IMG/VR virus record: IMGVR_UViG_3300028840_001395
Location: 310,001-374,000 of that record
DNA: 64,000 nt
Strand: one strand, 5' to 3'
The first letter of the stretch is position 1, and each line of letters opens with the position of its first letter. The notes below the pieces were generated by a model. The model worked only from the letters and a program-made list of their open reading frames with translations, was not told the DNA's origin and did no database searches. Positions 686 through 47,530 of the stretch are shown here, piece by piece. The position numbers and the translations under genes were made by a program.

Positions 686-1414
686 TCACACCTCGATGAC
701 CTTCTTCCAGTCGAACCCAGCGTTCTCCTCCCGCCGGAGATAGCCGAACGGGTTGCAGATGAGCCGAGTCTTGCCGATGGTGAAGTCGTGGGAGTCGTGG
801 GTGTGACCGTAGACCCAGACTTCGGGCTGGGCCTCCCGGATGACCCCCTCCATGTCACAGGTGAAGAAGTAGTTCAAAGGCTCACCCTTGAACCGAGGGT
901 GACTCCCCTTGGGCGTCGGGACGTGATGCGTGACCACGATGTCGTCCGACTGGACAGTTTCCGCGAGAAACTGGCGCGAAGCCTGATTAAGTGCCGGGAA
1001 CCAGTCGGTGAACCCTCCGTTGATGATATGGAAATCATTGAGCCTTACGCGATAGGGGTGAGATTCTGGTTTGTCCTCGAACCAGAGAGTGCAGCCAACA
1101 AATCTCTGACCCTCGATGGTCACCGTGTCGTTCTCAAGGACGTGGAGGTTGGGGAGTTCCTCCTGTGCCCTTTGGAGGATACCAAGGATGCCCCGGCGGG
1201 TCGAGTGATAGAACTCGTGGTTCCCCATCACGTACACGACATGCGGCACCCGCTGACAGAGAAGGGTCAGGCAGTATCCGAGGTTGAAGTGGATACCCAA
1301 GTCCCCGGCAATGACCAGGACATCGGTGCCATCGAGAGGGATCTCATCGCAGAAGTACTTTCCCCGATCATGGTGGAATTCTGCGTGGATATCGCTCACG
1401 ATTTGGACTCTCAT
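686..1414 (-). CDS. Calcineurin-like metallophosphoesterase
   Basis: Motifs SDIH, AGDLG, GNHE, THH and GHTH. Start placed at MRVQ (1414), which follows GAGGAGG. Confidence 0.93.
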   Translation of the reverse strand: MRVQIVSDIHAEFHHDRGKYFCDEIPLDGTDVLVIAGDLGIHFNLGYCLTLLCQRVPHVVYVMGNHEFYHSTRRGILGILQRAQEELPNLHVLENDTVTIEGQRFVGCTLWFEDKPESHPYRVRLNDFHIINGGFTDWFPALNQASRQFLAETVQSDDIVVTHHVPTPKGSHPRFKGEPLNYFFTCDMEGVIREAQPEVWVYGHTHDSHDFTIGKTRLICNPFGYLRREENAGFDWKKVIEV

Positions 1415-1448
1415 GTCGGCCTCCTCGACCATTCTACCCTATCGAGAG

Positions 1449-1463
1449 CAATAAAGCGTCTAT
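1449..1463 (+). promoter_or_regulatory. Degenerate copy of the candidate late promoter (CAAT-N7-CTAT) upstream of the helicase
   Basis: caataaagcgtctat ends 33 nt before ATG 1497, with 2 mismatches to the consensus. Confidence 0.3.
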
Positions 1464-1496
1464 GCTCGGGTATCAGTGAGACTTGAGGAGAGGGCA

Positions 1497-4400
1497 ATGA
1501 ACAAGCCGAACGCCAAGCGGGTCAGCAAGCGATACCTCAAGGGCACCATGAAGCGGACGGCTGCCCCCAGAGGGGGAGGCGGTCGTGTCACCCCGAAGAT
1601 GATGGTGGACTTCATCAACTTCGAGGTAGCCCTCGCCACCTACATCCGGTGGCTCGTCAACCAGGACAAGAAAACTGACCCCCTGGCCGCCGAGGGAAAG
1701 GCCATCCTCCGCAAGATCTTTGGCAGGGCCGTCTCCGGCATGGAGAAATACCTGGAGAGCGTGGCCCTTGAAGCCAATCTCAAGCAGATCGGCATGGCGT
1801 ACCGGAAGGCCCGTCGAGGGAAGGACGTTCGTGCCGTCCGGCTGCACGCCGAGTTCTACTCCACCCTCCTGCCCTGGCTCAAGAAGAACCAGAAGCTCAA
1901 GACCACCCTGGATGACCAGCAAGCCGTCGATCTGGCCCGTCGCATCGCCCGTATCTGTCAGGAGGAGGGTCTCGAATCCAGACTGAACCAGGCGGCAGGC
2001 ACCAAGGCGGTGTCCTCCTTCAAGCAGGGCTACAAGTGGATTCGGAAGGCAGCCGAGGCCGTGGGTGCCGGGCTGACCGAGACCGAGCGCGTGTTGGCGG
2101 ACGCCTCCCTGGCGAAGTCACTGGGTGGTGAGCTGCAGGACATCGAGGCCCGCATCGCTCTGACCGACCCGAACACCCCCGAGGCAGCAGACCTGGAAGA
2201 AGAGCGTCTGAGCATCCTCGACCAGATCGAGGATCTGGCGGCGAACACCCCCGACAAGAGCGTCGTCATGGCGACGGCTGCTTCGGCACAGGATGCCGGG
2301 GGGCAGGAGTTCGCCACCGCGATGGGCAAGGAGATGTCGCTCTCCGAAGATCAGGAAGACGCGATGATGGTCCGGGACCGGGGCATCATCGCTGCCGGAG
2401 CGGGGTCGGGCAAGACCCGCGTGCTGGCAGCGAAGGTCGGCTATCACGTCAAGGAGCTTGGCGTGCCTCCAAGTGCCATCCTCGCTACGAGCTTTACCAA
2501 CAAGTCCTCCGCCGAGCTGATCAAGCGCATCGAGGAGAAGGCCGGAGTCAAGATCGGGAAGGGTGACAAGGGTGGCTTCGGCACGACCCACTCCATTGCC
2601 CTGAAGTTCCTCTACAACCAGGCCCGTCCGTTCCTGAGATCCAACGGCTACATCGGTAAGAAGGAGACCTACAAACAGATCAAGCTCATTCGTCTGGCCA
2701 TTGAGCAGGTGCAGATGCCGGGCGGCGGTGAAGACCAGGCCCCCGAGCCGGTGGGATTCTGGGAGGGCAAGGCGGTCGGCAAGAAGTCTCCGGGCAAGAC
2801 CCCGGCGGATATCTCTCAGAGTCCGGACGTTGACCCGCCTGACCCCGATGTGGCGATGGAAGCCGAAAGGCTGGATAACTTCCAGGATGCCATTGATGAT
2901 GCCAAGGGCTACTTCCGTTCCATCATCCGCAATCGAGACAGACGCCCCGCAGGGATGGTCGCATGGGCTGAACGGGCTATGGACCTCCTGGAGCGCCTTG
3001 AGAACATGGACCCGGAGAGCCTCTCCGCTGCGGACAAGAAGGATCTCAACTACTTCTTCGAGAAGGCCCAGAACAGCCCATACGCCAAGGTGAAGAACTA
3101 CCGGGTCGCCAAGGACAAGGACGAGGACGAGGGCGGCGAGAAGAAAAAGAAGAAGCACCAGCTCGATGATTACGTCTACTTCAAGAAGCCCGCAGGGGAG
3201 TGGTTCAACCTGAACCGCACGCTGAGCCGTGGCCCGGAGGGCAAGGAGACTCCCATCCCCCTCGGTGAGTTCAAGAATGCCATCTCCATCCTCAAAGGCA
3301 AGGGCATCAGCCCCTCCCAGGCATGGGCCGGTGAGGGTGGATACGGTGAAGGTTCTGACCAGGCTGCCGTCTATGCTGCCTATGAGTGGCTCAAGGGCTC
3401 CAAGGGAGAGCCCAAATTCGCGGGCAAGGGCGACATGGATGACGCCCTGATCGATGCCGTGACCGCTCTCGTGTCCAGCCCCAAGATCCGCCGCCAGATG
3501 CAGAATCGCTTCAAGGTCGTGCTGGTCGATGAAGCCCAGGATCTCAACCGCGTCCAGCACAACCTGTTCGGCCTCATCACGGGCTATCTCGACCCGCAGA
3601 CACTGGAGCCTGCCGAAGACAAGGGGATGACGGCAGACACCTACACCCTCATCGGTGACGACAAGCAGGCCATCTACGAGTTCCGTGGGGCTGACCCCGA
3701 GGAATTCATTGACAAATCCGACATGACCGACGGTGGTGACGACTTCCAGACCAAGCTGCTGGAGACCAACTACCGCTCGGGAGCCGCCATCGTGGATGCA
3801 GCACAGCGGCTCATCGACCACAACGAGAAGCAAGTTCCGATGGTCTGCAAGGCCCACGAGGATCGGACTGGCACGGGCCAGATCCTCTCTCGACCGATGG
3901 AAGACATCGAGGAAGCCGCCATCAACGTGGCCGAGGACATCGAAGAGACCATGAAGATGGGAGGGGGTGAGGACACCAAGTACGCCGACTTCGGTGTCGC
4001 CCTCCGTTCCAACGCCGAAGCCTACGAGTACGGCCTGGAGATGCTCAAGCGGGGCATCCCATTCAAGTCCAACGCCCGGTTCTTCAACGACCGGAACACC
4101 AAGGCGCTCATCGGCTGGATGACTGTCGTGGAACAGGGTCTCGACTCCAGCAGCAAGGAAGCCCTGAAAGCCTTGGGTGACGCAACTGCAGCCCCCTACT
4201 CGAAGCTCAAGGGTGATACCCTGGTCAAGATGCTGCAAGACCGCGTTCCGAAGGACGTGGGGTGGGGCCGCTGGCTTGTGGAGGGAGGCTACCTCCGCAT
4301 CTACGGCAGGATGCAAGACGAGATCAAGAGCTTCACCAACAACGTCGAGAGAGTCGCAGACATGGACGGCACCCCGTCCTCTCTCGTGGAGCGACTGCTC

Positions 4401-5063
4401 GTAATCGAGGGCCTCGACGGCGAGAGCATGATGGAAGCCCTCGTAAACAACGTGCGGAACGACGATGAGGTGATGTCTCAGTTGGCGGCAGAGTCGGAGA
4501 ACGGTGTCCCCTCCGAGAGCCAGATTCAGAACATGGCGATGGCCCCCATCCAGCCCTTGATGGGCCTGGCGGAGAGCCAGGAAGACCTGAACGGGGCAAT
4601 GCGGTATGTCCGCCAGCTTCAGAAGGTCAACGAGAAGATCACTTCGGCAGACACCGAGGATGAGATCGACCGGGATGCGGTGACCATCGGCACGATGCAC
4701 TCGTGGAAGGGTCTGGAGTGCCCGCAGATGTTCGTCCCGATGGTCGGTGGCAAGTTCCCCCGCACCCGTATCGGCGTCCCCACATCGCTGGGCATTGAGG
4801 AGGAGGGGGCGGTCGCGGAGCAGGAGGACTTTGCCGAGGAAGGCCCGGATCTCTGGTCGGAGCGTCGGCTCGCCTACGTCGCCATCACCCGCGCCGAGCA
4901 GCGCTGCATCCTGCTCGACATCCCGCATCCGAAGTTCGGCACCCACAGCCAGTTCATCACTGAGGCGTGCGCCCCTCTCGATGACAGTGATGAGGAGGGG
5001 GCCATGCCCAAGCTGGGCCAGGAGATCCGAGAGATTCTGGCCCAGTGGCCGGAGGAGTTCTGA
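1497..5063 (+). CDS. UvrD/Rep/PcrA-family SF1A DNA helicase with a long N-terminal extension and an internal insertion
   Basis: Intact motifs: LSEDQ (Q), AGAGSGKT (I), SFTNKSSAEL (Ia), THS (Ib), VDEAQD (II), GDDKQAIYEFRGA (III), NYRS (IV), TMHSWKGLE (V), ERRLAYVAITRA (VI). GAGGAG precedes ATG 1497. Confidence 0.93.
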   Translation: MNKPNAKRVSKRYLKGTMKRTAAPRGGGGRVTPKMMVDFINFEVALATYIRWLVNQDKKTDPLAAEGKAILRKIFGRAVSGMEKYLESVALEANLKQIGMAYRKARRGKDVRAVRLHAEFYSTLLPWLKKNQKLKTTLDDQQAVDLARRIARICQEEGLESRLNQAAGTKAVSSFKQGYKWIRKAAEAVGAGLTETERVLADASLAKSLGGELQDIEARIALTDPNTPEAADLEEERLSILDQIEDLAANTPDKSVVMATAASAQDAGGQEFATAMGKEMSLSEDQEDAMMVRDRGIIAAGAGSGKTRVLAAKVGYHVKELGVPPSAILATSFTNKSSAELIKRIEEKAGVKIGKGDKGGFGTTHSIALKFLYNQARPFLRSNGYIGKKETYKQIKLIRLAIEQVQMPGGGEDQAPEPVGFWEGKAVGKKSPGKTPADISQSPDVDPPDPDVAMEAERLDNFQDAIDDAKGYFRSIIRNRDRRPAGMVAWAERAMDLLERLENMDPESLSAADKKDLNYFFEKAQNSPYAKVKNYRVAKDKDEDEGGEKKKKKHQLDDYVYFKKPAGEWFNLNRTLSRGPEGKETPIPLGEFKNAISILKGKGISPSQAWAGEGGYGEGSDQAAVYAAYEWLKGSKGEPKFAGKGDMDDALIDAVTALVSSPKIRRQMQNRFKVVLVDEAQDLNRVQHNLFGLITGYLDPQTLEPAEDKGMTADTYTLIGDDKQAIYEFRGADPEEFIDKSDMTDGGDDFQTKLLETNYRSGAAIVDAAQRLIDHNEKQVPMVCKAHEDRTGTGQILSRPMEDIEEAAINVAEDIEETMKMGGGEDTKYADFGVALRSNAEAYEYGLEMLKRGIPFKSNARFFNDRNTKALIGWMTVVEQGLDSSSKEALKALGDATAAPYSKLKGDTLVKMLQDRVPKDVGWGRWLVEGGYLRIYGRMQDEIKSFTNNVERVADMDGTPSSLVERLLVIEGLDGESMMEALVNNVRNDDEVMSQLAAESENGVPSESQIQNMAMAPIQPLMGLAESQEDLNGAMRYVRQLQKVNEKITSADTEDEIDRDAVTIGTMHSWKGLECPQMFVPMVGGKFPRTRIGVPTSLGIEEEGAVAEQEDFAEEGPDLWSERRLAYVAITRAEQRCILLDIPHPKFGTHSQFITEACAPLDDSDEEGAMPKLGQEIREILAQWPEEF

Positions 5064-5866
5064 TGGGCACCTACGTTCAGATCAGCCGTGATGAGCTAGA
5101 ACAGTGGATCAGCGGCCTCCCCCTCAAGGGCAAGTGGCAGGTCAAGCCCGGCTATGCTGGCGTCTACCTCCTTCCGCTGGGCCAGAATGTCGGCGTCAAG
5201 CTCTCCTCGACCATCGGGTCCAAGGACGATGCGATGGGTCGGGGCCGGGCCTCGATGCAACTGGCACTCGTGAGCCTGGTGACGAACCAGGTCTTGAACA
5301 AGAAGGCTCAGGGACAGAAACACTTCAAGCGCACCACGAACTGGAAGACCACCTGGCGCAAGGGCTTCGACCGGCTCAAGCAGGCCTACCTCAAGGCCCA
5401 GGGCTTCTACGACGCCATCGCGGTCATCGAGGACCGAGAGAAGTACAAGAACGATCTCCTACGGGAGATCGAGACCGCTCCGGCGTGGGCAGGTCACAAG
5501 ACCCTGGCTGACTTCCACGTCCGACTGGAGAAAGGCGGAGTCCTCACAGCCAAGCAAGTTGGCCTTCTCCGGGCCGAGGTCAGCAAGGCAGTGAAGAATT
5601 CGCCGGTACCGGCAGTGACTCCTGCCGAGCCGTCAGGCTCGCCTATCGATGATTCCCTGGTGGCTCGTCTGCGCGAACTATGGAAGGTCGCTCAGCGGTC
5701 AGGCGATAGCTGGCTCATGGACTTCGCACGGAACATCGGTGAGAAGGTGAAGGCAGGTGAATCCCTCACCCCTCGTCAGGAGGCGGTGATGGAGAAGAAT
5801 CTGAAACGCCATCGCTTGGCTAGTCTGATTCGGGAGCGTCTGGCCGTGGTCGAAGAACTTCCTTGA
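5063..5866 (+). CDS. Hypothetical protein with two short helical repeats (LTAKQ / LTPRQ type)
   Basis: TGATG coupling to the helicase stop, a GGAGGAG RBS and GC3-rich codons. Confidence 0.8.
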   Translation: MGTYVQISRDELEQWISGLPLKGKWQVKPGYAGVYLLPLGQNVGVKLSSTIGSKDDAMGRGRASMQLALVSLVTNQVLNKKAQGQKHFKRTTNWKTTWRKGFDRLKQAYLKAQGFYDAIAVIEDREKYKNDLLREIETAPAWAGHKTLADFHVRLEKGGVLTAKQVGLLRAEVSKAVKNSPVPAVTPAEPSGSPIDDSLVARLRELWKVAQRSGDSWLMDFARNIGEKVKAGESLTPRQEAVMEKNLKRHRLASLIRERLAVVEELP

Positions 5867-6101
5867 TATCTCCGAGCTGAAGAATCTTCCCCCGACGAAC
5901 AACGGCACCCCCATACATCACAGGCTTGACCTTGACGCGCTTGGCGAAGTTGCCGGTCACTTTCTCCACCTCGGTGGTGCGGAAACCGTTGTCGTAGTAG
6001 GTCACAGCATCCCCGGCCTTGACCTTCTTCACGTCCCCAACAGCAGGGCTCCGGCCACTCGCGGCACGGTAGATGACTTCGTATTTCTCATTAGTTTCCA
6101 T
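5820..6101 (-). CDS. Hypothetical protein (93 aa)
   Basis: ATG follows GGGAGAGG, with a TATAGT -10-like hexamer upstream at 6118-6123. It overlaps the previous gene tail-to-tail. Confidence 0.7.
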   Translation of the reverse strand: METNEKYEVIYRAASGRSPAVGDVKKVKAGDAVTYYDNGFRTTEVEKVTGNFAKRVKVKPVMYGGAVVRRGKILQLGDIKEVLRPRPDAPESD

Positions 6102-6156
6102 TGGATACCTCTCCCTTACTATACTCTATCCAATGGAAATTGAACCCCCTAGCGAG

Positions 6157-6885
6157 TCATCGGACGCAGCGGACGTGTCTCTCGTTGTTCTTGTGCGCCG
6201 TGAAGATCCACCCGTGAGAGAAAGACAGCCCCCACAGGGCCATCTCGTTATAGGAGGTCGAACTCCAGTGGATCTCACCGTCCAGGCAGTTTCCTCCGAG
6301 TCCCCCGGCCCAGTAGCAACCGCCCTCGGCACCACCCCCGAAGTTGCAGACCCCGTTGCATGTTGCATCCCAACAGTCTGTATCGTCCAATATGTCCCCG
6401 CTGTAGAACTTGCACTCGTGCGTGAGAGGGCACGACCCACCGGCCTCTACTGCGGGGCAGCCCCGCACCAACGACCGAAGCTCATCGATGGTGGGAAGCC
6501 TCATGCCCATGCCTTCGCAGTAGGTCTCGGCATCCGCGTAGGCGCGATCCTCGTCCGGGGTCTGCTCCCACTCCAGGCCCGTCGCGGGGTCGATGCAGGT
6601 CGAGCCATCGCACTCCAGGGACGTATCCGCGTCCGTGTCGGCGTCGGTGTCCGTGTCGGTGTCCGTATCGGTGTCCGTATCGGTGTCGGCGTCCGCGTCG
6701 CTATCGGCGTCTCCGGCCCCGCAGCTTCCTCCTTCGGGGATGCAGAAGCCCTCGCAGCACTCGAACCCACCCGGACAACCCTCGCTGGCATCACAGGCGA
6801 AGCGAGTCCCGGTCAAGTCCGTGTCCGTTCCACAGCCCGCGAGAGCGAAGCTGAACGCGATCAGGATGGTCAGCCAGGTCTTCAT
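6157..6885 (-). CDS. Lipoprotein with Cys-rich N-terminus, Asp-Thr linker and DUF1566 (Lcl C-terminal, CLec-like) domain
   Basis: Lipobox LAG-C18, a (D-A/T)n linker, and DPATGLEWEQ, AETYC, RLPTIDELRSL, WSST and terminal VRCVR motifs. Confidence 0.85.
   Translation of the reverse strand: MKTWLTILIAFSFALAGCGTDTDLTGTRFACDASEGCPGGFECCEGFCIPEGGSCGAGDADSDADADTDTDTDTDTDTDTDADTDADTSLECDGSTCIDPATGLEWEQTPDEDRAYADAETYCEGMGMRLPTIDELRSLVRGCPAVEAGGSCPLTHECKFYSGDILDDTDCWDATCNGVCNFGGGAEGGCYWAGGLGGNCLDGEIHWSSTSYNEMALWGLSFSHGWIFTAHKNNERHVRCVR
6622..6711 (-). repeat. Degenerate 6-bp coding repeat for the DADSDADADTDTDT... linker
   Basis: About 15 tandem gtgtcg/gtgtcc/gcgtcg-type hexamers. Confidence 0.85.
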
Positions 6886-7694
6886 CAGAACGTCCCTCCA
6901 ACAGCGAGACCCTTGAAGTCTCGATCCACTGCGGGAGCGACTGCGAATGCCGGTTCGTCCACCTCGAAGAAGTAGAGCAAGAGGGCCGTCACCGCCGCCA
7001 CCCCACCCACTCCAAGGATTACTCCACCAGCGATCTTTTCAGACCTACTTTTCTCTTCGATTTCCTGCACTTCGCTGTAGAACGTGCGGGTCGAGGTGCT
7101 CCGGTCAGCGAGACGCTGAGCTTCCGCGTCATCGGCATAACCCACACCTACCAGGACAGCCCCCGTAACCACGAGAGCGCCCGCCGTTCCTGTGGCCACC
7201 CACGTCCAGAGACGCTTCGGTTCCTGGGCCTCCAACTCAGCCTTGAACAGTCGGCGGAAGAGAACCGCCACCGCGTCAATAGCATCTTCCTCTGTGGCCC
7301 CCCGCAGTCGGCCTGCCTCGCGTCGCTCGACCTGGGCCGTCCGGATGTTGATGAGCTTGATGGAGATCAAGAGGGTCTCGCCCACCTTGTCCATCGAACC
7401 CGCCAGGAGCAAGTCCACTCCCAAGGCCCCGCCGATCTCCGCGAGGCAGGAGTCCTCGTCGCAGCCGACCATTTGCTTCTGTTGCTCGTGGTCGAACATC
7501 CTCTGGATGTCGTCGCGCCCGATGACCTGGTAGTCCCGCAGCCGGGCCGTCTCGTTGGCGAGGAACTCCTCGACCACGCGAGCGATCACCGGGTCAACGC
7601 CCCGGCGCACCTTGATCTCCGTCACGGCCAGCTTCGCTGCCCCCGCAGTCAGCGGGATGAGCAGTAGGACCAGGATGGTGAGGATCTTCTTCAT
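6885..7694 (-). CDS. Secreted/membrane protein with a CsgG/FlgO-like N-terminal domain, myxobacterial/deltaproteobacterial style
   Basis: True start is MKKILTILVLLLIPLTAGA (signal peptide). It contains GCDEDSCLAEIGGALGVDLLLAGSMDKVG, two Gly-rich hydrophobic helices and a C-terminal GLAVGGTF. The track's upstream extension overlaps the WGR gene and is spurious. Confidence 0.75.
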   Translation of the reverse strand: MKKILTILVLLLIPLTAGAAKLAVTEIKVRRGVDPVIARVVEEFLANETARLRDYQVIGRDDIQRMFDHEQQKQMVGCDEDSCLAEIGGALGVDLLLAGSMDKVGETLLISIKLINIRTAQVERREAGRLRGATEEDAIDAVAVLFRRLFKAELEAQEPKRLWTWVATGTAGALVVTGAVLVGVGYADDAEAQRLADRSTSTRTFYSEVQEIEEKSRSEKIAGGVILGVGGVAAVTALLLYFFEVDEPAFAVAPAVDRDFKGLAVGGTF

Positions 7695-7705
7695 GTCAGC
7701 CCCCG

Positions 7706-8347
7706 TCACGCGAACTCGATGTCCACGTCGTAGTCGCGGGCGAACTCGACTCCGCCCTTGGGGTCGAACTTGAGCAGTTCGTCGCCGTTCTCGTCCACCG
7801 CCGAGTAGCCCTTGACCGTGGTGCCGTCGCGGAGCACCTTGAGGCTCCGGATGAGGCTCCAGGGCTCCCCCAACGCGAGGAGGTCGCTCGACACCTGGGC
7901 CGGGGTGTTCGTCGCCTGTGCGGGCGCTGACGCCGCCTGGGCCGGGTTGCCGAGCGGGTGGTTGGACACCGGAGCGGGCTTCGGCTTCTTCGGGGCCTTC
8001 GCCTTCTTGCCGGGCTTCGAGGGCGTCGCGCCTCCGAGCTTGGCGATGGCCTTGGCGCTCATCCTGACGTACCCGTGGTCGGTGTAGTCGTAGCCCTTGG
8101 CGAGCTTCTCTTCGGTCTTGTCGCGGAGCTTGTCCCAGTCCGCGAGCATCGAGCCGTGCGGGGGTGCCCCGTTCTTGCCCCAGGCGATCTCGACCGGCTC
8201 GCCCAGGCCCCTGCCCGTGGCGTACCAGTACTTGGACGACCACCCCGACTTGTTGGCCGCGTTGCTCCCGACGTACTCCAGCCGGAACGACCAGGGGCGA
8301 CCCCGGCGGGCGATGTCCTCAGCGTCGTGAATCGTCATCCGTGCCAT
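7706..8347 (-). CDS. WGR-like domain protein
   Basis: SSKYWY...VEIAWGKNG...EEKLAKGY pattern, followed by a Lys/Pro/Ala linker and a small C-terminal domain. The start is coupled to the upstream stop (TGATG). Confidence 0.75.
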   Translation of the reverse strand: MARMTIHDAEDIARRGRPWSFRLEYVGSNAANKSGWSSKYWYATGRGLGEPVEIAWGKNGAPPHGSMLADWDKLRDKTEEKLAKGYDYTDHGYVRMSAKAIAKLGGATPSKPGKKAKAPKKPKPAPVSNHPLGNPAQAASAPAQATNTPAQVSSDLLALGEPWSLIRSLKVLRDGTTVKGYSAVDENGDELLKFDPKGGVEFARDYDVDIEFA

Positions 8348-8472
8348 CACTTGCCTCCCTTGCGCTTGCGCCGTCCAGAGAACGTGCGCTTCCGCTTCCC
8401 CGTCCAGCGCCGGACGATGGTGACCTTGCCGGGCACCTCGACCAGCACCTCGGTCTTGACGCACTGTGCCAT
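8347..8472 (-). CDS. Small basic protein (41 aa)
   Basis: MAQCVKTEVLVEVPGKVTIVRRWTGKRKRTFSGRRKRKGGK, with TGATG coupling on both sides and a GGAGG RBS. Confidence 0.65.
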   Translation of the reverse strand: MAQCVKTEVLVEVPGKVTIVRRWTGKRKRTFSGRRKRKGGK

Positions 8473-8654
8473 CACGCCTCCCCGGAGAAGCGGCCTCGGC
8501 ACGCCTTCTTGTTGGCCTGGTGCTTGCGGTCGCCCATCGTGACCGCCCGTCCGCGCCACTCGGCCAGGGTGCCCCCGGCGGCGAAGTGAGCGGCACGCGC
8601 CCCGCCCCGCTCGACGGAGGTGGCCTTGCTGTTGCCCTGATGCTGCCGTGCCAT
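8472..8654 (-). CDS. Small basic protein (60 aa), first gene of the leftward operon
   Basis: AAGGAG RBS directly downstream of the promoter motif, and TGATG coupling to the next gene. Confidence 0.7.
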   Translation of the reverse strand: MARQHQGNSKATSVERGGARAAHFAAGGTLAEWRGRAVTMGDRKHQANKKACRGRFSGEA

Positions 8655-8673
8655 CGCACTTCTCCTTTCCTCC

Positions 8674-8704
8674 CCTAGACTACTCTGGCCCAGCCCGAAA
8701 TAAG
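8674..8704 (-). promoter_or_regulatory. Leftward promoter-like motif CTTAT-N15-AGTAGTCTAGG
   Basis: One of three copies with identical boxes and spacing, each just upstream of an RBS and start codon. Confidence 0.75.
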
Positions 8705-8739
8705 ACCCTTTCTTTCAAAAAGAATTCGCGCGCGAGGGT

Positions 8740-8770
8740 CTTATCTTGCCCCCCGACAGAGTAGTCTAGG
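8740..8770 (+). promoter_or_regulatory. Rightward promoter-like motif CTTAT-N15-AGTAGTCTAGG
   Basis: Inverted partner of the 8674-8704 copy, 16 nt before ATG 8787. Confidence 0.75.
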
Positions 8771-8786
8771 GGAAGGGAGAGAGGCG

Positions 8787-9143
8787 ATGAACGGCATGGT
8801 CATTCACACCGCGAAAGTCGTCACCGAGCTGAAGGGGCTGACCTCCTGTGGCGAGGCCCGCAGGCTCATCGAGCGCGACCTGACCCCCGAGCAGCGGGAG
8901 CGGGTGCTGGCGCAGGAGGCCCGGTGGGAGGACTTCGAGCGCCGCGCCTGGGAGGGCGAGGACGAGGACGACGAGCCCGCCCCCGAGTGCGAGGGCTGCG
9001 ACTGCCCGGACGGGTGCGAGGGCTGCGTGGCGTGGGAGCTGGACGAGAGCATGGACGGCGACCACGAGAGCGGCCTGGCCAGCGCGGGCTTCGGGACGGA
9101 CGAGGACTACGGCTGCTTCGACGGCGGCTGCGACGAGTGGTAG
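8787..9143 (+). CDS. Small, highly acidic, Cys-containing protein
   Basis: 34 of 118 residues are D/E. It has a purine-rich RBS and is the first gene after the promoter motif. Confidence 0.75.
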   Translation: MNGMVIHTAKVVTELKGLTSCGEARRLIERDLTPEQRERVLAQEARWEDFERRAWEGEDEDDEPAPECEGCDCPDGCEGCVAWELDESMDGDHESGLASAGFGTDEDYGCFDGGCDEW

Positions 9144-9150
9144 GGAGGAC

Positions 9151-9753
9151 GTGATGGACCTGCAACTGATGAGAGCGGACATCGAGGCGGTTGCCGCCAA
9201 GGTGCTGCGTCGGCCCGTCAAGGTCAAGGTGGGCGAGATCACCGACATCGAGGGCGAGTCGGTCGAGGGCCTGACCGTGGACGGCGACATGTTCCTCTAC
9301 GCGGTCAAGCGGACGCGGAGCGGTCTGGGGGGCAAGCCCATCGAGTTCGAGATGGTCGCCATCGACATCCTGTTCGGCGGCGACGGGCAGTTCGTGGAGC
9401 CGGACGTGCGGCGTCACCCGAGCGACGGTGAGACGTTCCACGAAAGCGACGCCATCGCGGAGGTCATCGCGGTGCTGGCCCGTGCGGAAGCTCACGGGCA
9501 CCTGGAGGCCATCGGAGAGGCCCGGCACATCGCAGAGATGAACGAAGCCGCGAAGGGACTCGACGGCAAGACGGTGCCCCTGGTGCTGCCGCCGGGTTAC
9601 CCGGTCATGAAGATCGTCATCCAGCAGCGCACGGAGTGCAAGCACTGTGGCAAGGAGATGCCGAAGAACTCCGAGGGCTGGTGGGTGCGGACGACCGCCG
9701 AGCACAAGGGTGGGCTCTACCACACGGGCTGCATCAAGATCGAGGAGAAGTGA
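9151..9753 (+). CDS. Hypothetical protein with a C-terminal CxxC...HxxC zinc finger
   Basis: CKHCGKEM...LYHTGC motif and a GGAGG RBS. Confidence 0.8.
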   Translation: MMDLQLMRADIEAVAAKVLRRPVKVKVGEITDIEGESVEGLTVDGDMFLYAVKRTRSGLGGKPIEFEMVAIDILFGGDGQFVEPDVRRHPSDGETFHESDAIAEVIAVLARAEAHGHLEAIGEARHIAEMNEAAKGLDGKTVPLVLPPGYPVMKIVIQQRTECKHCGKEMPKNSEGWWVRTTAEHKGGLYHTGCIKIEEK

Positions 9754-9754
9754 C

Positions 9755-10198
9755 GTGAATCACGCTGCTATCCACACGGTCGTCCACACGAGCCATGAAC
9801 CCGACCGGCGACGCAGGCGTCGTCGGGCAGCCGATGGGATCACCCCCCGCGACAAGACCCGAGCGCCAGTCATCCCCGACCTGGACACGCTGCCTCCGTT
9901 CATGCTCGTGCCCGACACCGACGACCCCAAGGTCAGCCTCGTGTACGCCCTGGTGGACGGCATCGCCCGCTTCAAGGGTCGCATCTGGTTCACGGAGAAA
10001 TACCGCTACGGGGGCCGCGAGTATGGAGAGGGCTGGATGGCCGAAATCGCGGGCCGCGAGGATCCCGCTCAGCACGAGCACTTCTCCGACCGCACATGCA
10101 CCAAGAGCGGCAAGGCGACAGCCATCGGGAGGCTCGTGTCGCACCCCATCAGCCCGGAGATGTTGAAGAAAGGCTTATCTCGGGGTCGGGCAAAGTAG
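9755..10198 (+). CDS. Hypothetical protein (about 147 aa)
   Basis: GTG at 9755 follows GAGGAG. The stop codon lies inside the next promoter motif. Confidence 0.6.
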   Translation: MNHAAIHTVVHTSHEPDRRRRRRRAADGITPRDKTRAPVIPDLDTLPPFMLVPDTDDPKVSLVYALVDGIARFKGRIWFTEKYRYGGREYGEGWMAEIAGREDPAQHEHFSDRTCTKSGKATAIGRLVSHPISPEMLKKGLSRGRAK

Positions 10199-10204
10199 TC
10201 TAGG
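10174..10204 (+). promoter_or_regulatory. Third copy of CTTAT-N15-AGTAGTCTAGG
   Basis: cttatctcggggtcgggcaaagtagtctagg is followed by TGGAGGG and ATG 10212. Confidence 0.75.
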
Positions 10205-10211
10205 TGGAGGG

Positions 10212-11186
10212 ATGATGATGGATACCACAGCGACACCCAAGACCCCGGAGACCCACGCTGCCATCGCCCAGATCACCGCGAGCCACTGCTGCGTGTGCCG
10301 GGCGGAACTCACCGACGCCGAGAGCGTCGAGCACGGCATCGGGCCGGTCTGCTCCAAGCGTTACTACAACCCGCTGCACAAGCCCGACGCGAGCCAGATC
10401 AAGAACGCCCTCGGGCTGCTGGCCTGCTCCGACCTGCCCGAGCACATCCAGGACGGGTTCCTCAAGCTCGTCAACACCAAGGGCGGCGAGCCGCACGCCA
10501 ACGCCCGGCTCGCGTGCAACCTGCTGGTGTACTGGGCCTCGGCCCACTTCGACAACCGCGACGAGGTGTTCAAGTGCAGCGCCATCGTCCGCACGTTGGG
10601 CTACACCGAGCTGGCTGACAAGCTGGAAGCGGACCGCACGGTCGCCATCGTCCGCGAGCACTCCGACCACATCGAGGCCTTCATCCCCGACAAGTACCGC
10701 TTCCGGGGCGACATGCGGGACATCCCCGGCGCGGAGGCGCTCACGACCACCGAGTCCAGCCCCACGGGCGACACGGTGGAGAAGCCGCTCAAGGTCGGTC
10801 GCAAGGTCGGCTGGAAGGTGCCCATCGCGGAGAAGGACTACTTCCTGACCGTCCTGGGCTACCACTGCGGCGGCGACCTCGCCTGCGGTGACGGGCGCAT
10901 CTGGAAGATCCCGAACAAGCGGTGGGCAGACCTCCGACCCTTCAAGGCCCCCGCCCAGGCGACCACGGGGACGGCCCCGGCCAACGGGAGCATCCGGCTG
11001 GAGGACACCCCGAACGGTCACGTCCGCGTGTTCACCCCCTACAACACGGACTTCATCACCGACCTCAAGAAGATCCCCTGGAAGCAGCGCCGCTGGAACC
11101 CCAACGCCCGGTGTTGGGAGGTGGGCAAGAAGTACGAGGGTCGAGCCAAGGAGCTGATCAAGACCCACTACGGGGTGGCCCTGTGA
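10212..11186 (+). CDS. DUF6011-like zinc-finger protein with a C-terminal HARP-like domain
   Basis: CCVCRAELTDAESVEHGIGPVC at the N-terminus and FTPYNTDFITDLKKIP..RRWNPNARCWEV at the C-terminus. Confidence 0.7.
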   Translation: MMMDTTATPKTPETHAAIAQITASHCCVCRAELTDAESVEHGIGPVCSKRYYNPLHKPDASQIKNALGLLACSDLPEHIQDGFLKLVNTKGGEPHANARLACNLLVYWASAHFDNRDEVFKCSAIVRTLGYTELADKLEADRTVAIVREHSDHIEAFIPDKYRFRGDMRDIPGAEALTTTESSPTGDTVEKPLKVGRKVGWKVPIAEKDYFLTVLGYHCGGDLACGDGRIWKIPNKRWADLRPFKAPAQATTGTAPANGSIRLEDTPNGHVRVFTPYNTDFITDLKKIPWKQRRWNPNARCWEVGKKYEGRAKELIKTHYGVAL

Positions 11187-12072: not shown

Positions 12073-12234
12073 CTAGTCGGACTTCTGAACGGCCCGAATC
12101 TTCTTCTGGATGGCTTCCTTCTGCTCCGGTGGCAGGCCCGGATTCCGCAGGGCTTCGCGGAGCCGGGCGATGTACTTGCGCTCGTAGGGAGCCCGGATCT
12201 TCTGGCTGATGTCACTGCGTCGGATGAAGGGCAT
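12073..12234 (-). CDS. Small basic protein (53 aa)
   Basis: Below the track cut-off. MPFIRRSDISQKIRAPYERKYIARLREALRNPGLPPEQKEAIQKKIRAVQKSD is TGATG-coupled to the upstream gene and fills the gap. Confidence 0.7.
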   Translation of the reverse strand: MPFIRRSDISQKIRAPYERKYIARLREALRNPGLPPEQKEAIQKKIRAVQKSD

Positions 12235-15200
12235 CAGCACGGCCCCCCGCCCGGATCATCCGGCCCCTCCTCGGGGTACGGAGCGAGCACCACATTCGCC
12301 GGGTTCGGGATCTCCCGGTTGAAGCCCCGGAACATCGGGCGAGCGCCCAGACGGTAACGGTCAGCCGCAGCGAAGCCTTCGCCGTAGCCCGCCGGGGAGA
12401 TGTCACCACCGAGGGTGACACCATCCTCCTGCGTCGTGTCCGTTCCCAGAACCCCGTAGGTCACGATGACCATCTGGATCTCATCACCATCGGTCAACGT
12501 GTAGGATCCACCGATCAGGTCGGCCTCCTCGTAAAAGTTCCGCACCAGGAGCGCCCGGCAGACCAGTGCCCCACCCTTCATCACGGGCTGGAGCGAGTCC
12601 GAGAAGGTCTCGGTCACCCAGTCCACCGGCCCGCCGGGGTGCTGGCCATCGAGCACGTACACGGAGCCACCGCCCCGGAAGAGACGGAAGATGCGGGAGC
12701 CGCCCGTATTCTGTTCCGTCCAGGCCGAGTAGTCCGTGACCGACACGGAGCCATCCGACTGAGCGAAGAGAGCGCCGGGCTCACCGAAGAAGCGGTCATA
12801 CTCATCCCGCTCGACCAAGGGCATGAGCGTCTGGATGGGACGCGGCCCGGTCGGGCTGGCCTTCATCGCAGAGGCGTCATCCCGCAGCGGGTTCTCGCAG
12901 AGGAAGTCCGAGTCCTGGAGCAGGGCACCCAGCGGCAGGCGTTCGGTCATGCCGGTGATGTTGACCTGGCTGGTGCCATCGCCCGCGTTCATCGGACGGT
13001 CAACACCTCCCGAAAGTGGGCTGCTGGAGCGCAGGCTGAAGGGGAACTCGTTGGTCGTATCCGCGAACGGGATGATAGTCTGGAATGGTGAGTTGACCGT
13101 CGGTGGGACGCTCTCAGTGTACCACTTGGTCTCGTAGGTGACCTCGTTGCCCTCGGCACCCGTGGGGACAGCGGCGATCCGAACCTTGTCCGGCTTCTCG
13201 GGGATCGCCAGGCAGTTCTGGCTCAGCGTCGAGTGCCTGTTGATGGCCGAGGCCAGATTGGTCACGGTCTCGTTGAGGTCACCCGTATCGTGAATGACCG
13301 TGATGTCCAAGTACTTCCCATCGAGATCAACGGTGTGTGCCGCCACATCCTGTGGTTGCAGGATCGCAGCCAGGAATGGCATGATCGGCCCAGGGCCAAC
13401 AGGAGCCGCACTGGCGTTGTAGATCCAGTAATCCACTGTATCAGGAGCGACCACTGCAGCCGTCACAATCAATGCCTCATACCCAGGAGGCGGAGGCACG
13501 GTATGATCCTGTGACAACACCACCACATCTCCTGGAAGGACACCGGACAAGGTCTGCGCTGGAAAGGGAACCCCTGTATTTGCTGGGATGGCAGCCACGG
13601 GGATAGATACGGGGACGATGGTGTAACCAGGCACTCCCTGTGGCCAGTCGTAGGCGGTCGGCGTCCAGGTGTTGAACACACCCACTCTGACGATTCCATC
13701 TGTCGGGACATGGCCCTCGAATACGATGTGTTCCAGATCTTCACGGGCGTTGATGATCACAGTGTCCCCGACCGTGACCCCAGAAATCGCCTTGTTAGTG
13801 AAGGTGTAGAATCCCGGTGCGTAGGTGCCCACCAGTTGGGTCGAATCCTTGATGAACGACTGAATCGAAGTGGTGTCGATGTCCCAGACATCCTCCTCGG
13901 GAATGCCCAGGCCAGCCGGAGGAGCGTCAGTGAGCTTGGACTTGTAGGCAGCCTGTGCCCCGTAGAGATCGACGTAGGTGCCATCCAGCAACCCGAAGCG
14001 ACAGAACACGTAGTTCTCATCGTCCGGATTCAAGGTGTCCACACCCCCCTGCACGAACAGAGTCAACTCGGCCCGTGAGTCGTTGGTCTTCTGCCCTTCG
14101 GTGAAGGCCCGTGTCTTGATGCGCCAGGCAGGCTGGTCATCCGAAGAGGGCTGCCGCAGCGCCGCCGGAGGCTTGTTGCAGGTGAAGCCCACATCGAGCG
14201 GAGTGCCAGGGAACAGCTCTCCGCCGATCTTGCCCGTCCCCAACGTCGTGTAGAAGTCCATGCTGGCCAGAACCTCGAAGCCACGGGCGTTCGGGGTCTG
14301 CGGGATGTACTCGCCATCGAAGTACTGCTGGATGGGCGTCTCCATCGCGTACTGGCCCGAGATCGGCACCTGACCATAGCGGTGCTCGTAGTCCGACGCC
14401 ACCGTGACTTCGCCACCCCGCGTCATGTAGGGGTCGCCCTGGTACACGGTACGGTTGAAGTCGTTGTAGAGCTGATCGTTGTACCCCGCCGGACACGGGA
14501 TGCAGAGATGGATACCTTCGAGTTCCTCTTCATCCGAGTCGTCGTGGGGATCTCCCGAACCGTCGTGCCAGCGCACGAGCACGTAGTTGTTCTGGTCGAT
14601 CCAGCCCTTGGCGAAACCGAAGATGCAGCACTCGACCACGTAGTCGAGATCCTCGAAGGTCTCACCATCCGTGTAGTGCGTCGAGCGCGTCAGGTCGAGG
14701 ATGTTGGACGGCACGATGTAGGTGTGGTCACCCTCACTCTCCGTCATGGAGTCACTGCACAGATCCTTGGCCCCGTCCTGCAAGATGAACAGCGTCTGCT
14801 GGTCGGCATCCTCACGGATGAGGTTCGGAGCCGAATCAGAGAGCATCTCCCAGCGATTCCCCTGGAAGGTACGCCCACCGAAGGTGTCCCAGTCCCGCTT
14901 GTCATAGACCCCGTAGAGCCGGGCGATGCCCAGGTACGGCGGAAGCTGAATGCCCTTGAGACCGCGCCCCAGGTCGGAGGAGTTGACCGCGTTGAGCGCC
15001 TCGATCACCTCGTCCGCGTAGAGCACGGTGTCATCGATGTCCGTGGTCTTGCGGGCCTTGTAGTAGGGCAGGTTGTTCCACGCGGCGACGAAGGTACCCG
15101 ACCCACCGTAGTTGGACGGGGTGTCAGTCGTGAAGTACATCGAGTAGACGCCCGGCGACGGGCTCCCGTTGTTGTCCGAGCCACCGATGATGTGGAAAAC

Positions 15201-47297: not shown

Positions 47298-47530
47298 CAG
47301 CGCCCTCCGCCGAACTGCAGCCGATTCAACTGCTCACGGAGCTGAAGGATCGTCTTTCGGTCATCCTCCACCGCACCTTCCAAGAGGGTCTTCAGCTTCT
47401 CCAACGCCACTTTCTGACGGTCAACCATCGGCAGCCGGACGGTACGCTCGGGGGAATCGCCCCACTGGCCTGGGTCGAGGCCTAGCTTCTTCAGAAGCTC
47501 CTGGATCTCCTTCAGGTCAGACTCATTCAT
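47297..47530 (-). CDS. Small coiled-coil protein (77 aa)
   Basis: ATGA and TGATG couplings on the two sides. Confidence 0.75.
   Translation of the reverse strand: MNESDLKEIQELLKKLGLDPGQWGDSPERTVRLPMVDRQKVALEKLKTLLEGAVEDDRKTILQLREQLNRLQFGGGR

What the first reader, a model, noticed from the sequence alone, without database searches (positions are those of the whole stretch)
6157..7694. Host-style envelope gene pair at the end of a phage early operon
Seen: a signal-peptide CsgG/FlgO-like protein ending in GGTF and a Cys-rich DUF1566 lipoprotein with a (DT)n linker are TGATG-coupled and continue the operon from the 8674 motif. Known: these architectures are typical of Myxococcota/deltaproteobacterial secretomes. 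Inference: they point to the host group and suggest early surface remodelling, such as superinfection exclusion or receptor masking. More speculatively, if the host performs TraAB outer-membrane exchange, the lipoprotein could reach neighbouring cells.
Basis: partly seen in the sequence, partly recalled or inferred. Interest (0 to 1): 0.6.

Follow-up and report, generated by a model that had tools for sequence, protein, structure and literature searches.

The report
Host-derived envelope gene pair in megaphage
A 436-kb phage carries, under one of its own promoters, a two-gene cassette copied from Myxococcota-type bacteria: a membrane-anchored periplasmic protein and its partner, a lectin-type lipoprotein. 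The cassette most likely alters the infected cell's envelope, but its exact role is untested.

Summary
Window 6885-7694(-) encodes a 269-aa protein with a type I signal peptide, ending in GGTF. Window 6157-6885(-) encodes a 242-aa lipoprotein with a LAGC lipobox, 19 Cys, a (DX)n spacer and an Lcl_C/DUF1566 domain. The genes overlap in TGATG and lie downstream of a phage promoter-like motif that occurs 47 times in the genome.

- "CsgG/FlgO-like" is true only at fold level. The N-domain has the TolB-N/LpoB/PelC/CsgG fold, followed by two hydrophobic helices.
- A conserved 93-aa gene follows the pair, so it is not at the operon end.

The window belongs to a complete 435.8-kb phage with direct terminal repeats. 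The pair is host-derived:
- The phage copies form one clade nested among Myxococcota homologues.
- Bacterial-type contigs carry the same two-gene unit. About 41% of 75 bacterial homologues are directly followed by a lipoprotein gene.
- The 6-Cys "knot" after the lipobox occurred only in lipoproteins that follow such a gene.

Between related phages gene 1 is under purifying selection (dN/dS 0.10). The distal half of the lectin domain is hypervariable (27% identity against 89% for gene 1), and no DGR is present.

Early timing, superinfection exclusion and outer-membrane exchange remain untested. This is a new variant of phage-borne envelope accessory genes, and it points to an undescribed bacterial cassette.

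The parts
8674..8720 (-). Phage promoter-like bipartite motif (GGGTCTTATTT - N10 - CAGAGTAGTCTAGG, read on the minus strand). It is followed by a Shine-Dalgarno sequence and the first gene of the row. A mirror-image copy at 8724-8770 drives the divergent plus-strand genes.
   Evidence: 47 sites in the genome. For 44 of the 47 an ORF of at least 40 aa opens within about 100 nt downstream, mostly within about 25 nt. The 68%-related phage has a variant directly in front of its copy of gene 1.
8472..8654 (-). 60-aa ORF, first gene of the row. Function unknown.
   Evidence: No Pfam family.
8347..8472 (-). 41-aa basic ORF, coupled by GTGATG overlaps on both sides. Function unknown.
7706..8347 (-). 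213-aa ORF directly upstream of the pair. It has no signal peptide and no family match. The 89%-related phage keeps it as a 214-aa gene.
6885..7694 (-). Gene 1 (P0001, 269 aa). Type I signal peptide (1-19). Periplasmic domain of TolB-N/LpoB/PelC/CsgG fold (20-150) with the conserved CxxxxC-LAEIGGALGVD motif. Two hydrophobic Gly/Ala/Val helices (about 164-187 and 220-245). Conserved C-terminal tail ending GGTF.
   Evidence: dN/dS is 0.10 against the 89%-related phage.
6157..6885 (-). Gene 2 (P0002, 242 aa). Lipoprotein signal with Cys18. 6-Cys 'knot' module (28-55, RFxC...GCPxGxxC..GxC). Acidic (DX)n spacer (59-88). C-type-lectin-like Lcl_C/DUF1566 domain (about 90-242), whose distal half (153-242) is hypervariable between related phages.
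5820..6101 (-). 93-aa gene that follows the pair in all three related phages whose DNA was read (74-80% identity). It has no signal peptide and no family match. A degenerate copy of the promoter motif precedes it.

Best explanation
The pair is a two-gene envelope cassette that an ancestor of this group of huge phages took from a Myxococcota-type bacterium. The phage now expresses it from its own promoter.

Shown:
- Gene 1 is Sec-exported. It has a periplasmic domain of the TolB-N/LpoB/PelC/CsgG fold, two hydrophobic helices and a conserved tail.
- Gene 2 is translationally coupled to gene 1. It is a lipoprotein made of a lipid anchor, a small 6-Cys knot, an acidic (DT)n spacer and a C-type-lectin-like Lcl_C domain.
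- The same unit exists in bacteria.
- Gene 1 is under purifying selection in the phages, while the distal half of the lectin domain changes fast.

Inferred:
- In the infected cell both proteins go to the envelope.
- Gene 1's product is held in the inner membrane by its helical hairpin, with both ends in the periplasm. It acts as the cognate partner (anchor or assembly/placement factor) of the lipoprotein, recognising its knot module.
- The lectin domain, on its flexible spacer of about 30 residues, binds an envelope or surface glycan.

Most likely consequence (a guess, about 0.3 on its own): the lectin masks or alters a glycan receptor, so that further phages, or the phage's own progeny, do not adsorb to infected cells and debris.
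For: Identity and anatomy.

Host origin:
- Closest relatives outside the phages are 48-58% identical over the full length. They lie in a Myxococcota MAG and in environmental contigs with bacterial-type neighbours.
- The six phage copies form one clade (SH-aLRT 98) inside a 99-supported clade with these sequences, nested in Myxococcota diversity.
- P0002 was the only hit of a strict lipobox screen and the only (DX)n protein in the 436-kb genome.

The pair is a unit:
- Seven of seven lipoproteins with the knot plus (DX)n architecture follow a gene-1 homologue at -1 to +2 nt. These are P0002, P0028, P0139, P0140, P0029, P0141 and P0138.
- Two knot-less (DX)n-Lcl_C lipoproteins do not follow such a gene.
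- In 75 complete bacterial loci, 31 have a lipoprotein gene starting within about 25 nt after the homologue. Of other long ORFs in the same loci, 30 of 236 passed a more liberal test (odds ratio 4.8, p = 4e-7).
- The N-terminal class of the lipoprotein follows the clade of gene 1.

Functional in the phage:
- Intact and coupled in phages that are 89% and 68% related.
- dN/dS is 0.10 for gene 1.
- A phage promoter motif lies upstream in two of the phages.

Ligand-binding role:
- Lcl_C is the glycosaminoglycan-binding domain of the Legionella adhesin Lcl (PMC11162425).
- DUF1566 is a C-type-lectin-fold target of diversity-generating retroelements (PMC5758913, PMC11661182).
- Against the closest phage, identity is 72% in signal plus knot, 61% in the proximal half of Lcl_C and 27% in the distal half, while gene 1 is 89% identical.
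Against: - No expression data exist; no RNA run holds the stretch.
- No direct evidence shows that the two proteins bind each other.
- The membrane (inner or outer) and the face on which the lipoprotein sits are unknown.
- The helices of gene 1 are Gly-rich, and their loop does not follow a clear positive-inside pattern.
- Gene-1 homologues also occur without a lipoprotein neighbour, for example P0013 and roughly half of the loci.
- No homology to any known exclusion lipoprotein was found.
- The ligand of this Lcl_C domain is unknown.
- The genome scan used an exact peptide pattern, which may favour some lineages.
Confidence: 0.55

Rival explanations
1. The pair changes host adhesion or behaviour. 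The lectin lipoprotein would bind exopolysaccharide or neighbouring cells, causing aggregation or a change in motility or biofilm. That would keep infected cells close to fresh hosts rather than blocking phage adsorption.
For: Lcl is an adhesin involved in biofilm formation (PMC11162425, PMC3460888). The bacterial cassette lipoproteins carry adhesin-type domains such as Kelch, Big_13, FG-GAP, fn3 and BACON. Myxococcota are social, surface-bound bacteria (general knowledge).
Against: Surface exposure of the lipoprotein is not shown. Nothing distinguishes this reading from receptor masking. The fast change in the lectin domain fits an arms race at least as well.
Confidence: 0.15
2. The pair acts on the cell wall from within the periplasm. 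An LpoB/TolB-like domain and a lipoprotein on a long spacer would reach peptidoglycan synthases or the Tol-Pal system and retune envelope growth during a long infection.
For: The fold of residues 20-150 matches LpoB, TolB-N and PelC. LpoB is an outer-membrane lipoprotein that reaches its target through a long disordered linker (general knowledge), which resembles the anchor-spacer-domain design of P0002.
Against: In this pair the LpoB-like domain is not on the lipoprotein. The bacterial family has up to 17 or more paralogues per genome, paired with very different lipoproteins. That does not suit a single housekeeping target. Fold similarity is modest (TM 0.3-0.6, 10-17% identity).
Confidence: 0.1
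3. The pair is a SitB/SitA-like cassette. The lipoprotein would be cargo that spreads to neighbouring cells by TraAB outer-membrane exchange, with gene 1 as the SitB-type helper and the 93-aa gene as an immunity-type partner.
For: The layout is the same as sitBAI. A gene with a type I signal sequence overlaps a lipoprotein gene that has a conserved N-terminal part and a variable C-terminal domain, and the cassette sits on a prophage-like element of a myxobacterium (PMC5562445). A conserved small gene follows the pair in all the phages.
Against: The SitA N-terminal escort domains are about 375 aa and the C-termini are nucleases (PMC8546572). Here the N-terminal module is about 30 aa and the C-terminus is a lectin-fold domain. 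SitB had no detectable homology and was predicted to be a beta-barrel (PMC5562445), whereas gene 1 has a clear TolB-N-like domain. sitA is reported only in traAB-bearing Myxococcales (PMC5562445), and traAB was not looked for in the candidate host lineage.
Confidence: 0.05
4. The pair is a two-component spanin: an inner-membrane protein plus an outer-membrane lipoprotein that fuse the membranes at lysis.
For: The gene order and overlap (membrane protein first, then lipoprotein) resemble Rz/Rz1 (general knowledge).
Against: Homologues are abundant in bacterial chromosomes in non-phage contexts, paired with lipoproteins of up to 1214 aa. Gene 1 has a cleaved signal peptide and a globular domain, not an N-terminal anchor with a coiled coil. 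Gene 2 is large and Cys-rich, not small and Pro-rich. There is no PHROG spanin hit and no adjacent lysis gene.
Confidence: 0.03
5. The pair is a passenger without a role for the phage: recently captured host DNA on its way to decay.
For: Large phages carry many host-like genes of unknown use (general knowledge). No function was shown here.
Against: The pair is kept intact and coupled in phages that have diverged to 68% identity and from 62% to 46% G+C. dN/dS is 0.10 for gene 1. Its G+C matches the phage genome. A phage promoter lies upstream.
Confidence: 0.04

Closest known systems
Phage-encoded exclusion or receptor-masking lipoproteins (T5 Llp, phi80/N15 Cor, TP-J34 Ltp); comparison from general knowledge
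   Same: A phage gene for a lipoprotein with no virion role, expected to sit in the infected cell's envelope. It is under a phage promoter together with non-structural genes.
   Different: There is no sequence or PHROG relation. Here it is a two-gene unit with a dedicated membrane partner. The lipoprotein is larger and built as knot, acidic spacer and lectin domain. It has clear bacterial chromosomal homologues. Any exclusion function is untested.
sitBAI cassettes of Myxococcus (SitB accessory protein plus SitA lipoprotein toxin, on Mx-alpha prophage-like units; PMC5562445, PMC8546572)
   Same: An upstream gene with a type I signal sequence overlaps a lipoprotein gene. The lipoprotein has a conserved N-terminal module and a swappable C-terminal domain. 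The cassette is found in myxobacteria and is linked to a mobile element.
   Different: The C-terminal domain here is a lectin fold, not a nuclease. The N-terminal module is about 30 aa, not about 375. No recognisable immunity gene is present. Homology of gene 1 to SitB could not be tested and looks unlikely.
TolB N-terminal domain / LpoB / PelC / CsgG / LPP20-type periplasmic alpha/beta domains
   Same: Residues 20-150 of gene 1 fold like these domains. Foldseek probability is 1.0 and E is about 2e-5 to TolB (4pwz), CsgG (4uv2), LpoB (4q6l) and PelC (5t11).
   Different: None of their Pfam families is matched. Gene 1 is not a lipoprotein. It has no CsgG transmembrane beta-hairpin and no TolB propeller. 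Instead it carries two hydrophobic helices and a conserved C-terminal GxF tail.
Lcl C-terminal domain (DUF1566) proteins: the Legionella adhesin Lcl (PMC11162425) and C-type-lectin-fold targets of diversity-generating retroelements (PMC5758913)
   Same: The match to Pfam Lcl_C is above threshold. The model matches Lcl-CTD 8q4e and C-type lectin domains. Variation is concentrated in the distal half of the domain.
   Different: There is no collagen-like stalk. An acidic (DT)n spacer and a lipid anchor take its place. The phage has no reverse transcriptase and no template repeat, so the variability is not made by a DGR.
Lambda 'moron' envelope genes (bor lipoprotein, lom); comparison from general knowledge
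   Same: Host-like envelope genes carried as accessory cargo by a phage.
   Different: These are not prophage-expressed genes of a temperate phage as far as can be told. They lie behind a phage-specific promoter in a 436-kb genome and form a coupled pair.

Membership tests
Pfam Lcl_C / DUF1566 (PF07603) | Profile match above the gathering score | tested here: met
   48.0 bits against a cut-off of 34.9, covering residues 96-242 and the whole profile. It is the only such domain in the phage genome.
Pfam Lcl_C / DUF1566 (PF07603) | C-type-lectin-like fold resembling the solved Lcl C-terminal domain | tested here: met
   In the AF2 model the domain has pLDDT of 85-97. The best Foldseek rows are CLEC-2, Lcl-CTD 8q4e (probability 1.00), other C-type lectin domains and FGE. 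E-values are weak, 0.009-0.1.
Bacterial lipoprotein (type II signal peptide) | Basic n-region, hydrophobic core and lipobox [LVI][ASTVI][GAS]C within the first 15-25 residues or so | tested here: met
   MKTWLTILIAFSFALAG-C18. The lipobox is kept in all phage and bacterial homologues. No dedicated predictor such as SignalP or LipoP was available.
CsgG family (PF03783) | Profile match; lipoprotein; transmembrane beta-hairpin insert that forms the channel | tested here: not met
   No Pfam CsgG match at E <= 1. There is no lipobox in gene 1. The model shows no beta-hairpin insert, and the only resemblance is in the core alpha/beta domain.
FlgO / LPP20-type flagellar ring proteins | Profile match; flagellar gene context | tested here: not met
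   No Pfam or NCBIfam match. The neighbours are phage genes.
Pfam DUF3280 (PF11684) | Profile match above the gathering score | tested here: inconclusive
   21.2 bits against a cut-off of 30.1, E = 4e-4. Several 52-58% homologues carry precomputed PF11684 hits, listed plainly for P0008, P0009, P0011 and P0014 and marked weak.
TolB-N / LpoB / PelC / CsgG fold superfamily | Three-dimensional similarity of the alpha/beta domain | tested here: met
   Foldseek gave 65 matches at E <= 0.001. The top ones are TolB, CsgG, LpoB, PelC, GNA1162 and FlgT, with probability 1.0. The domain's pLDDT is above 90. The nearest ESM Atlas clusters carry LpoB and CsgG Pfam labels.
Two-component spanin (Rz/Rz1 type) | i-spanin with an N-terminal membrane anchor and a coiled-coil periplasmic domain; small Pro-rich o-spanin lipoprotein; lysis-cassette context | tested here: not met
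   Bacterial chromosomal homologues are paired with lipoproteins of up to 1214 aa.
sitBAI toxin cassette | Upstream gene with a type I signal sequence overlapping a lipoprotein gene | tested here: met
   TGATG overlap, a signal peptide in gene 1 and a lipobox in gene 2. This shows a shared layout, not homology.
sitBAI toxin cassette | SitA escort domain of about 375 aa, a C-terminal nuclease toxin and a downstream immunity gene | tested here: not met
   The N-terminal module is about 30 aa and the C-terminus is Lcl_C. The 93-aa downstream gene matches no immunity family.
sitBAI toxin cassette | Sequence homology of gene 1 to SitB; host with traAB | not testable with these tools
DGR target gene | Reverse transcriptase and a template repeat matching the variable region | tested here: not met
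   No RVT_1 match in the phage genome. No repeat of the gene elsewhere in the genome.
Known phage exclusion lipoproteins (Llp, Cor and similar) | Sequence relation to a described family; block of adsorption or DNA entry | tested here: not met
   No PHROG family for gene 1. Gene 2 has only a marginal hit to a PHROG of unknown function (E = 0.002). No tblastn hit in 50,697 phage records. The functional part cannot be tested here.

The most novel reading that the evidence does not exclude
Gene-1-type proteins and the lipoprotein genes that follow them may form a widespread, undescribed Myxococcota system. In this reading the membrane-anchored TolB-N-like protein is the dedicated placement or surface-display factor for its cognate lipoprotein, and it recognises a class-specific module right after the lipid anchor (the 6-Cys knot, 'CSLTIDP' or 'GTFxVxFxW'). 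The megaphage would have captured one such unit to display a fast-evolving lectin on the infected cell.
Probability: 0.25. Interest if true: 0.75.

Novelty: new variant of a known kind. Interest (0 to 1): 0.55.

Why it matters
1. Host lead. The pair gives a concrete, testable host lead for a complete 436-kb phage that otherwise has almost no annotatable genes. The lead is a Myxococcota lineage that carries the same knot-(DT)n-lectin cassette. One such contig comes from a sister sample of the same JGI series, with matching G+C. Very large phages of Myxococcota did not turn up in the literature I could search.

2. A new kind of phage envelope gene. Known phage exclusion lipoproteins are single small genes. 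This is a coupled partner-plus-lectin unit with a hypervariable binding half, and it would be a new way for a phage to edit the host surface.

3. A bacterial cassette. The phage pair drew attention to a bacterial two-gene cassette that seems undescribed. It is present in about half of the sampled Myxococcota genomes, in up to 17 or more copies, and is linked to adhesin-type lipoproteins. It could bear on the open question of how these bacteria place lipoproteins in or on the outer membrane.

Tried and rejected
- Complex prediction of mature P0001 with mature P0002 gave no verdict (ipSAE 0.06, mark 0.34). It is evidence neither for nor against binding.
- DGR hypothesis for the hypervariable lectin half: rejected. 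The phage has no reverse transcriptase and no template repeat.
- Spanin hypothesis: rejected on architecture and on the bacterial homologues (see rivals).
- 'DUF2380' literature lead (SitA6 toxins, pMF1.20 nuclease): this refers to a different Pfam family (PF09533), not PF11684, so it was dropped.
- Sequence search of solved structures with P0002 and with the P0001 profile: nothing meaningful.
- NCBIfam: only low-complexity hits of the (DT)n spacer to SD-repeat adhesins and short signal-peptide hits.
- PHROGs and Pfam on neighbouring genes and on the giant ORFs: almost nothing. The exceptions are Baseplate_J, DUF6011, Metallophos and UvrD.
- IMG/VR scan for other viral contigs with gene 1: none.
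- Expression: no RNA run holds the stretch.
- Terminator and sigma-70 promoter scans: no signal above the shuffled controls.
- The costly representative-library search was not run.
- Bias note: the homologue list for P0002 is biased by shared DTDTD words. I therefore did not use its 106 of 110 (DX)n count as a frequency.
Full report
WHAT IS THERE

The window is bases 310,001-374,000 of a 435,804-bp virus record with direct terminal repeats, rated complete. The same sequence was assembled by JGI as a 435,640-bp contig from a sediment metagenome and, in part, in independent runs.

On the minus strand, a gene row starts behind a promoter-like motif. It runs 60 aa, 41 aa, 213 aa, P0001 (269 aa, window 6885-7694), P0002 (242 aa, window 6157-6885) and 93 aa (window 5820-6101). 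Start and stop codons overlap or nearly touch throughout.

The pair overlaps in TGATG. No sigma-70-type promoter or convincing terminator lies inside the row.

THE PROMOTER MOTIF

- CCTAGACTACTCTG at 8674 is the reverse complement of the functional orientation.
- Across the genome there are 47 copies with at most 2 mismatches. They share a bipartite pattern: GGkCTTAyyT, 9-10 nt, cAGAGTAGTCTAGG. For 44 of the 47 an ORF of at least 40 aa opens within about 100 nt downstream, mostly within about 25 nt.
- Two copies face each other at 8674-8770 and serve the divergent gene rows. A third copy at 10191 serves the DUF6011 gene.
- In a phage whose gene 1 is 68% identical, a variant of the motif sits directly in front of that gene.
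- The long minus-strand block at 12-64 kb holds a Baseplate_J protein and giant ORFs and has no copy.
- The motif therefore marks a non-structural transcription class. Whether that class is 'early' is an inference, and no RNA data exist.

GENE 1

- P0001 has a type I signal peptide (no Cys; AGA|A).
- Residues 20-150 are modelled with pLDDT above 90. They match TolB-N, CsgG, LpoB, PelC, GNA1162 and FlgT with Foldseek probability 1.0.
- Two stretches, 164-187 and 220-245, have Kyte-Doolittle means of 1.6-2.3 and are modelled as a helical hairpin.
- The tail ends GGTF. Among 75 bacterial homologues, 48 end in an aromatic residue, commonly as Gly-x-Phe/Trp.
- The family signature is a CxxxxC pair followed by LAEIGGALGVD.
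- No Pfam family is reached. DUF3280 scores 21.2 bits against a cut-off of 30.1.
- 'CsgG/FlgO-like' is therefore right as a fold class and wrong as a family assignment.

GENE 2

- P0002 has a lipobox (LAG-C18), then a module RFxC...GCPxGxxC..GxC with six Cys.
- A spacer of 15 Asp-X pairs follows, then an Lcl_C/DUF1566 domain above the Pfam threshold.
- The model matches C-type lectin domains and the solved Lcl C-terminal domain.
- P0002 was the only hit of a strict lipobox screen, and it is the only (DX)n protein and the only Lcl_C protein in the phage.

WHERE IT COMES FROM

- Neither protein has a relative in 50,697 GenBank phage records, in PHROGs or in IMG/VR beyond the window's own record.
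- Related huge-phage contigs from other metagenomes keep the pair, together with the 93-aa gene, next to the same helicase and nuclease genes.
- Outside the phages, the closest gene-1 relatives are 48-58% identical over the full length. Two lie in one MAG (JAADFL01). treekit labels it Myxococcota, and it has 9 MYXO-CTERM matches and at least 17 paralogues. The others lie on short environmental contigs.
- One of those contigs (L097) comes from a sister sample of the same JGI series as the phage and has 65% G+C, against 62% for the phage. Another set (L096, L100; 52% G+C) includes L096, which comes from the same sample as the 46%-G+C related phage.
- In a quick maximum-likelihood tree the six phage copies form one clade (support 98) inside a clade (support 99) with these sequences, nested among Myxococcota homologues. 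The careful search did not finish, and the root is a midpoint only. The direction bacterium to phage is therefore inferred from nesting and numbers, not proven.
- Of 131 relatives found among 185,579 species genomes, the best 80 are almost all Myxococcota, 'Deltaproteobacteria' or Bdellovibrionales MAGs. That scan relied on an exact peptide pattern.
- A profile search of 151 genomes of the MAG's phylum found the family in 74.

THE PAIR IS A BACTERIAL UNIT

- In L097, gene 1's homologue is followed after 1 nt by P0140, which has a lipobox, the same knot, a (DX)n spacer and Lcl_C, plus a further Cys-rich extension.
- The same arrangement occurs in L100 with P0029, in L096 with P0141, and in the MAG with P0138. 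P0138 has the same knot and a very long (DT)n spacer, but begins an FGE-sulfatase-type domain instead of Lcl_C; both domains are C-type-lectin folds.
- All seven knot-bearing lipoproteins seen follow a gene-1 homologue. Two knot-less (DX)n-Lcl_C lipoproteins that I checked do not.
- More broadly, 31 of 75 complete bacterial loci have a lipoprotein gene starting within about 25 nt of the homologue's stop. Several more do so if the start codon is chosen differently. Of other long ORFs in the same loci, 30 of 236 passed a more liberal test (odds ratio 4.8, p = 4e-7).
- These lipoproteins range from 117 to 1214 aa and carry Kelch, Big_13, FG-GAP, fn3, BACON, Lcl_C or FGE domains.
- Their first residues after the lipid Cys fall into classes (knot, CSLTIDP-like, GTFxVxFxW-like) that follow the clades of gene 1.
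- This is long-standing linkage. It does not prove physical interaction, and relatedness alone would also produce shared labels within clades.

SELECTION IN THE PHAGES

- Against the closest phage, gene 1 is 89% identical with dN/dS 0.10.
- Gene 2 is 72% identical in signal plus knot, 61% in the proximal half of Lcl_C and 27% in the distal half. In C-type-lectin-fold DGR targets the distal part is the ligand-binding variable region (PMC5758913, PMC11661182).
- The phage has no reverse transcriptase and no template repeat, so the change is ordinary but fast.

HOW IT LIKELY WORKS

- Shown: two envelope-directed proteins, inherited as a unit from bacteria, kept under selection and placed behind a phage promoter.
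- Inferred: the first is held in the inner membrane with its domain and tail in the periplasm. It serves the lipoprotein through the knot. The lectin domain binds a glycan on a spacer of about 30 residues.
- Guessed: the benefit to the phage is receptor masking or exclusion. The main alternative is altered adhesion, followed by an LpoB-like action on wall synthesis.
- The SitB/SitA parallel (PMC5562445, PMC8546572) is striking in layout, but the domains differ, and homology could not be tested.
- Spanin and DGR-target readings fail on tested features.

QUALITY CHECKS

- A 109-kb contig from an independent run covers window 4500-9800 without a single difference.
- Two other runs break only within 6627-6700, the (GACACN)n repeat. 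Summed depth there jumps to 46-936 because many other organisms in these communities carry the same kind of repeat. Flanking depths are equal. A chimeric join is therefore very unlikely.

VERDICT

The host-group inference is well supported. The functional reading is plausible but untested.

The finding is a new variant of phage-borne envelope accessory genes. It carries a more interesting by-product: an apparently undescribed Myxococcota cassette that links a TolB-N-like membrane protein to diverse lipoproteins.

Noticed in passing
window 8674-8770 and 10191-10204; genome-wide 47 sites: A bipartite promoter-like motif GGkCTTAyyT-N9-10-cAGAGTAGTCTAGG sits directly before Shine-Dalgarno sequences and start codons. 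Copies often occur as face-to-face pairs in divergent intergenic regions. The motif is absent from the block of giant and baseplate genes. It looks like the promoter of a phage-specific transcription class.
   Followed up: partly
window 6105-6145, minus strand: A degenerate copy of the same motif (GGGGTTCAATTT-N8-TAGAGTATAGTAAGG) lies in the 55-nt gap before the 93-aa gene. That gene may therefore also be transcribed on its own.
   Followed up: no
window 38689-42210(-), 47527-59322(-), 12234-18587(-), 28637-34039(-): The 1173-aa protein carries Baseplate_J, so this minus-strand block is at least partly tail structure. ORFs of 3931, 2117 and 1800 aa have no Pfam match at all.
   Followed up: partly
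window 1476-5866(+): A UvrD-type helicase (1195 aa) and a gene of about 270 aa lie convergent to the row. They are absent at this position in the 89%-related phage L003 and present in the 68%-related one. This is an indel or rearrangement hot spot next to the pair.
   Followed up: partly
window 6624-6800: The (GACACN)n stretch that codes the (DT)n spacer draws 46-936x summed contig depth in three metagenomes, against 12-20x beside it. Many other members of these communities therefore encode (DT)n-type linkers. Short-read unitigs break there.
   Followed up: partly
Myxococcota genomes G119, G064, G114, G149 and others: The C-terminal module of gene 1 (two hydrophobic helices plus the GxF tail, profile positions about 161-265) matches on its own in ORFs of 350-560 aa that have other N-terminal parts. 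It behaves as an independent membrane-anchor module.
   Followed up: no
L015 (MAG JAADFL01), 1258-7104: One paralogue of gene 1 is flanked by two large Cys-rich proteins with long (DT)n runs. The upstream one (844 aa) has a lipobox. The convergent downstream one (701 aa) has an N-terminal signal sequence. This MAG also has six Lcl_C matches.
   Followed up: partly
L097, L096/L100 against the phage loci L001 and L009: G+C of the phages tracks that of the co-occurring bacterial-type cassette contigs. It is 62% against 65% in sister samples of one JGI series, and 46% against 52% for L096, which is from the same sequencing sample as the phage. This hints at phage-host pairs in two habitats.
   Followed up: partly
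window 7706-8347(-): The 213-aa protein just upstream of the pair has a WGR-like stretch (SKYWYATGRG) but no Pfam or PHROG match. It is conserved in the 89%-related phage (214 aa) and missing from that position in the 68%-related one.
   Followed up: no
window 10212-11186(+): A 324-aa protein with a DUF6011 zinc-ribbon-like motif sits behind its own copy of the promoter motif. It is conserved in the related phages.
   Followed up: no
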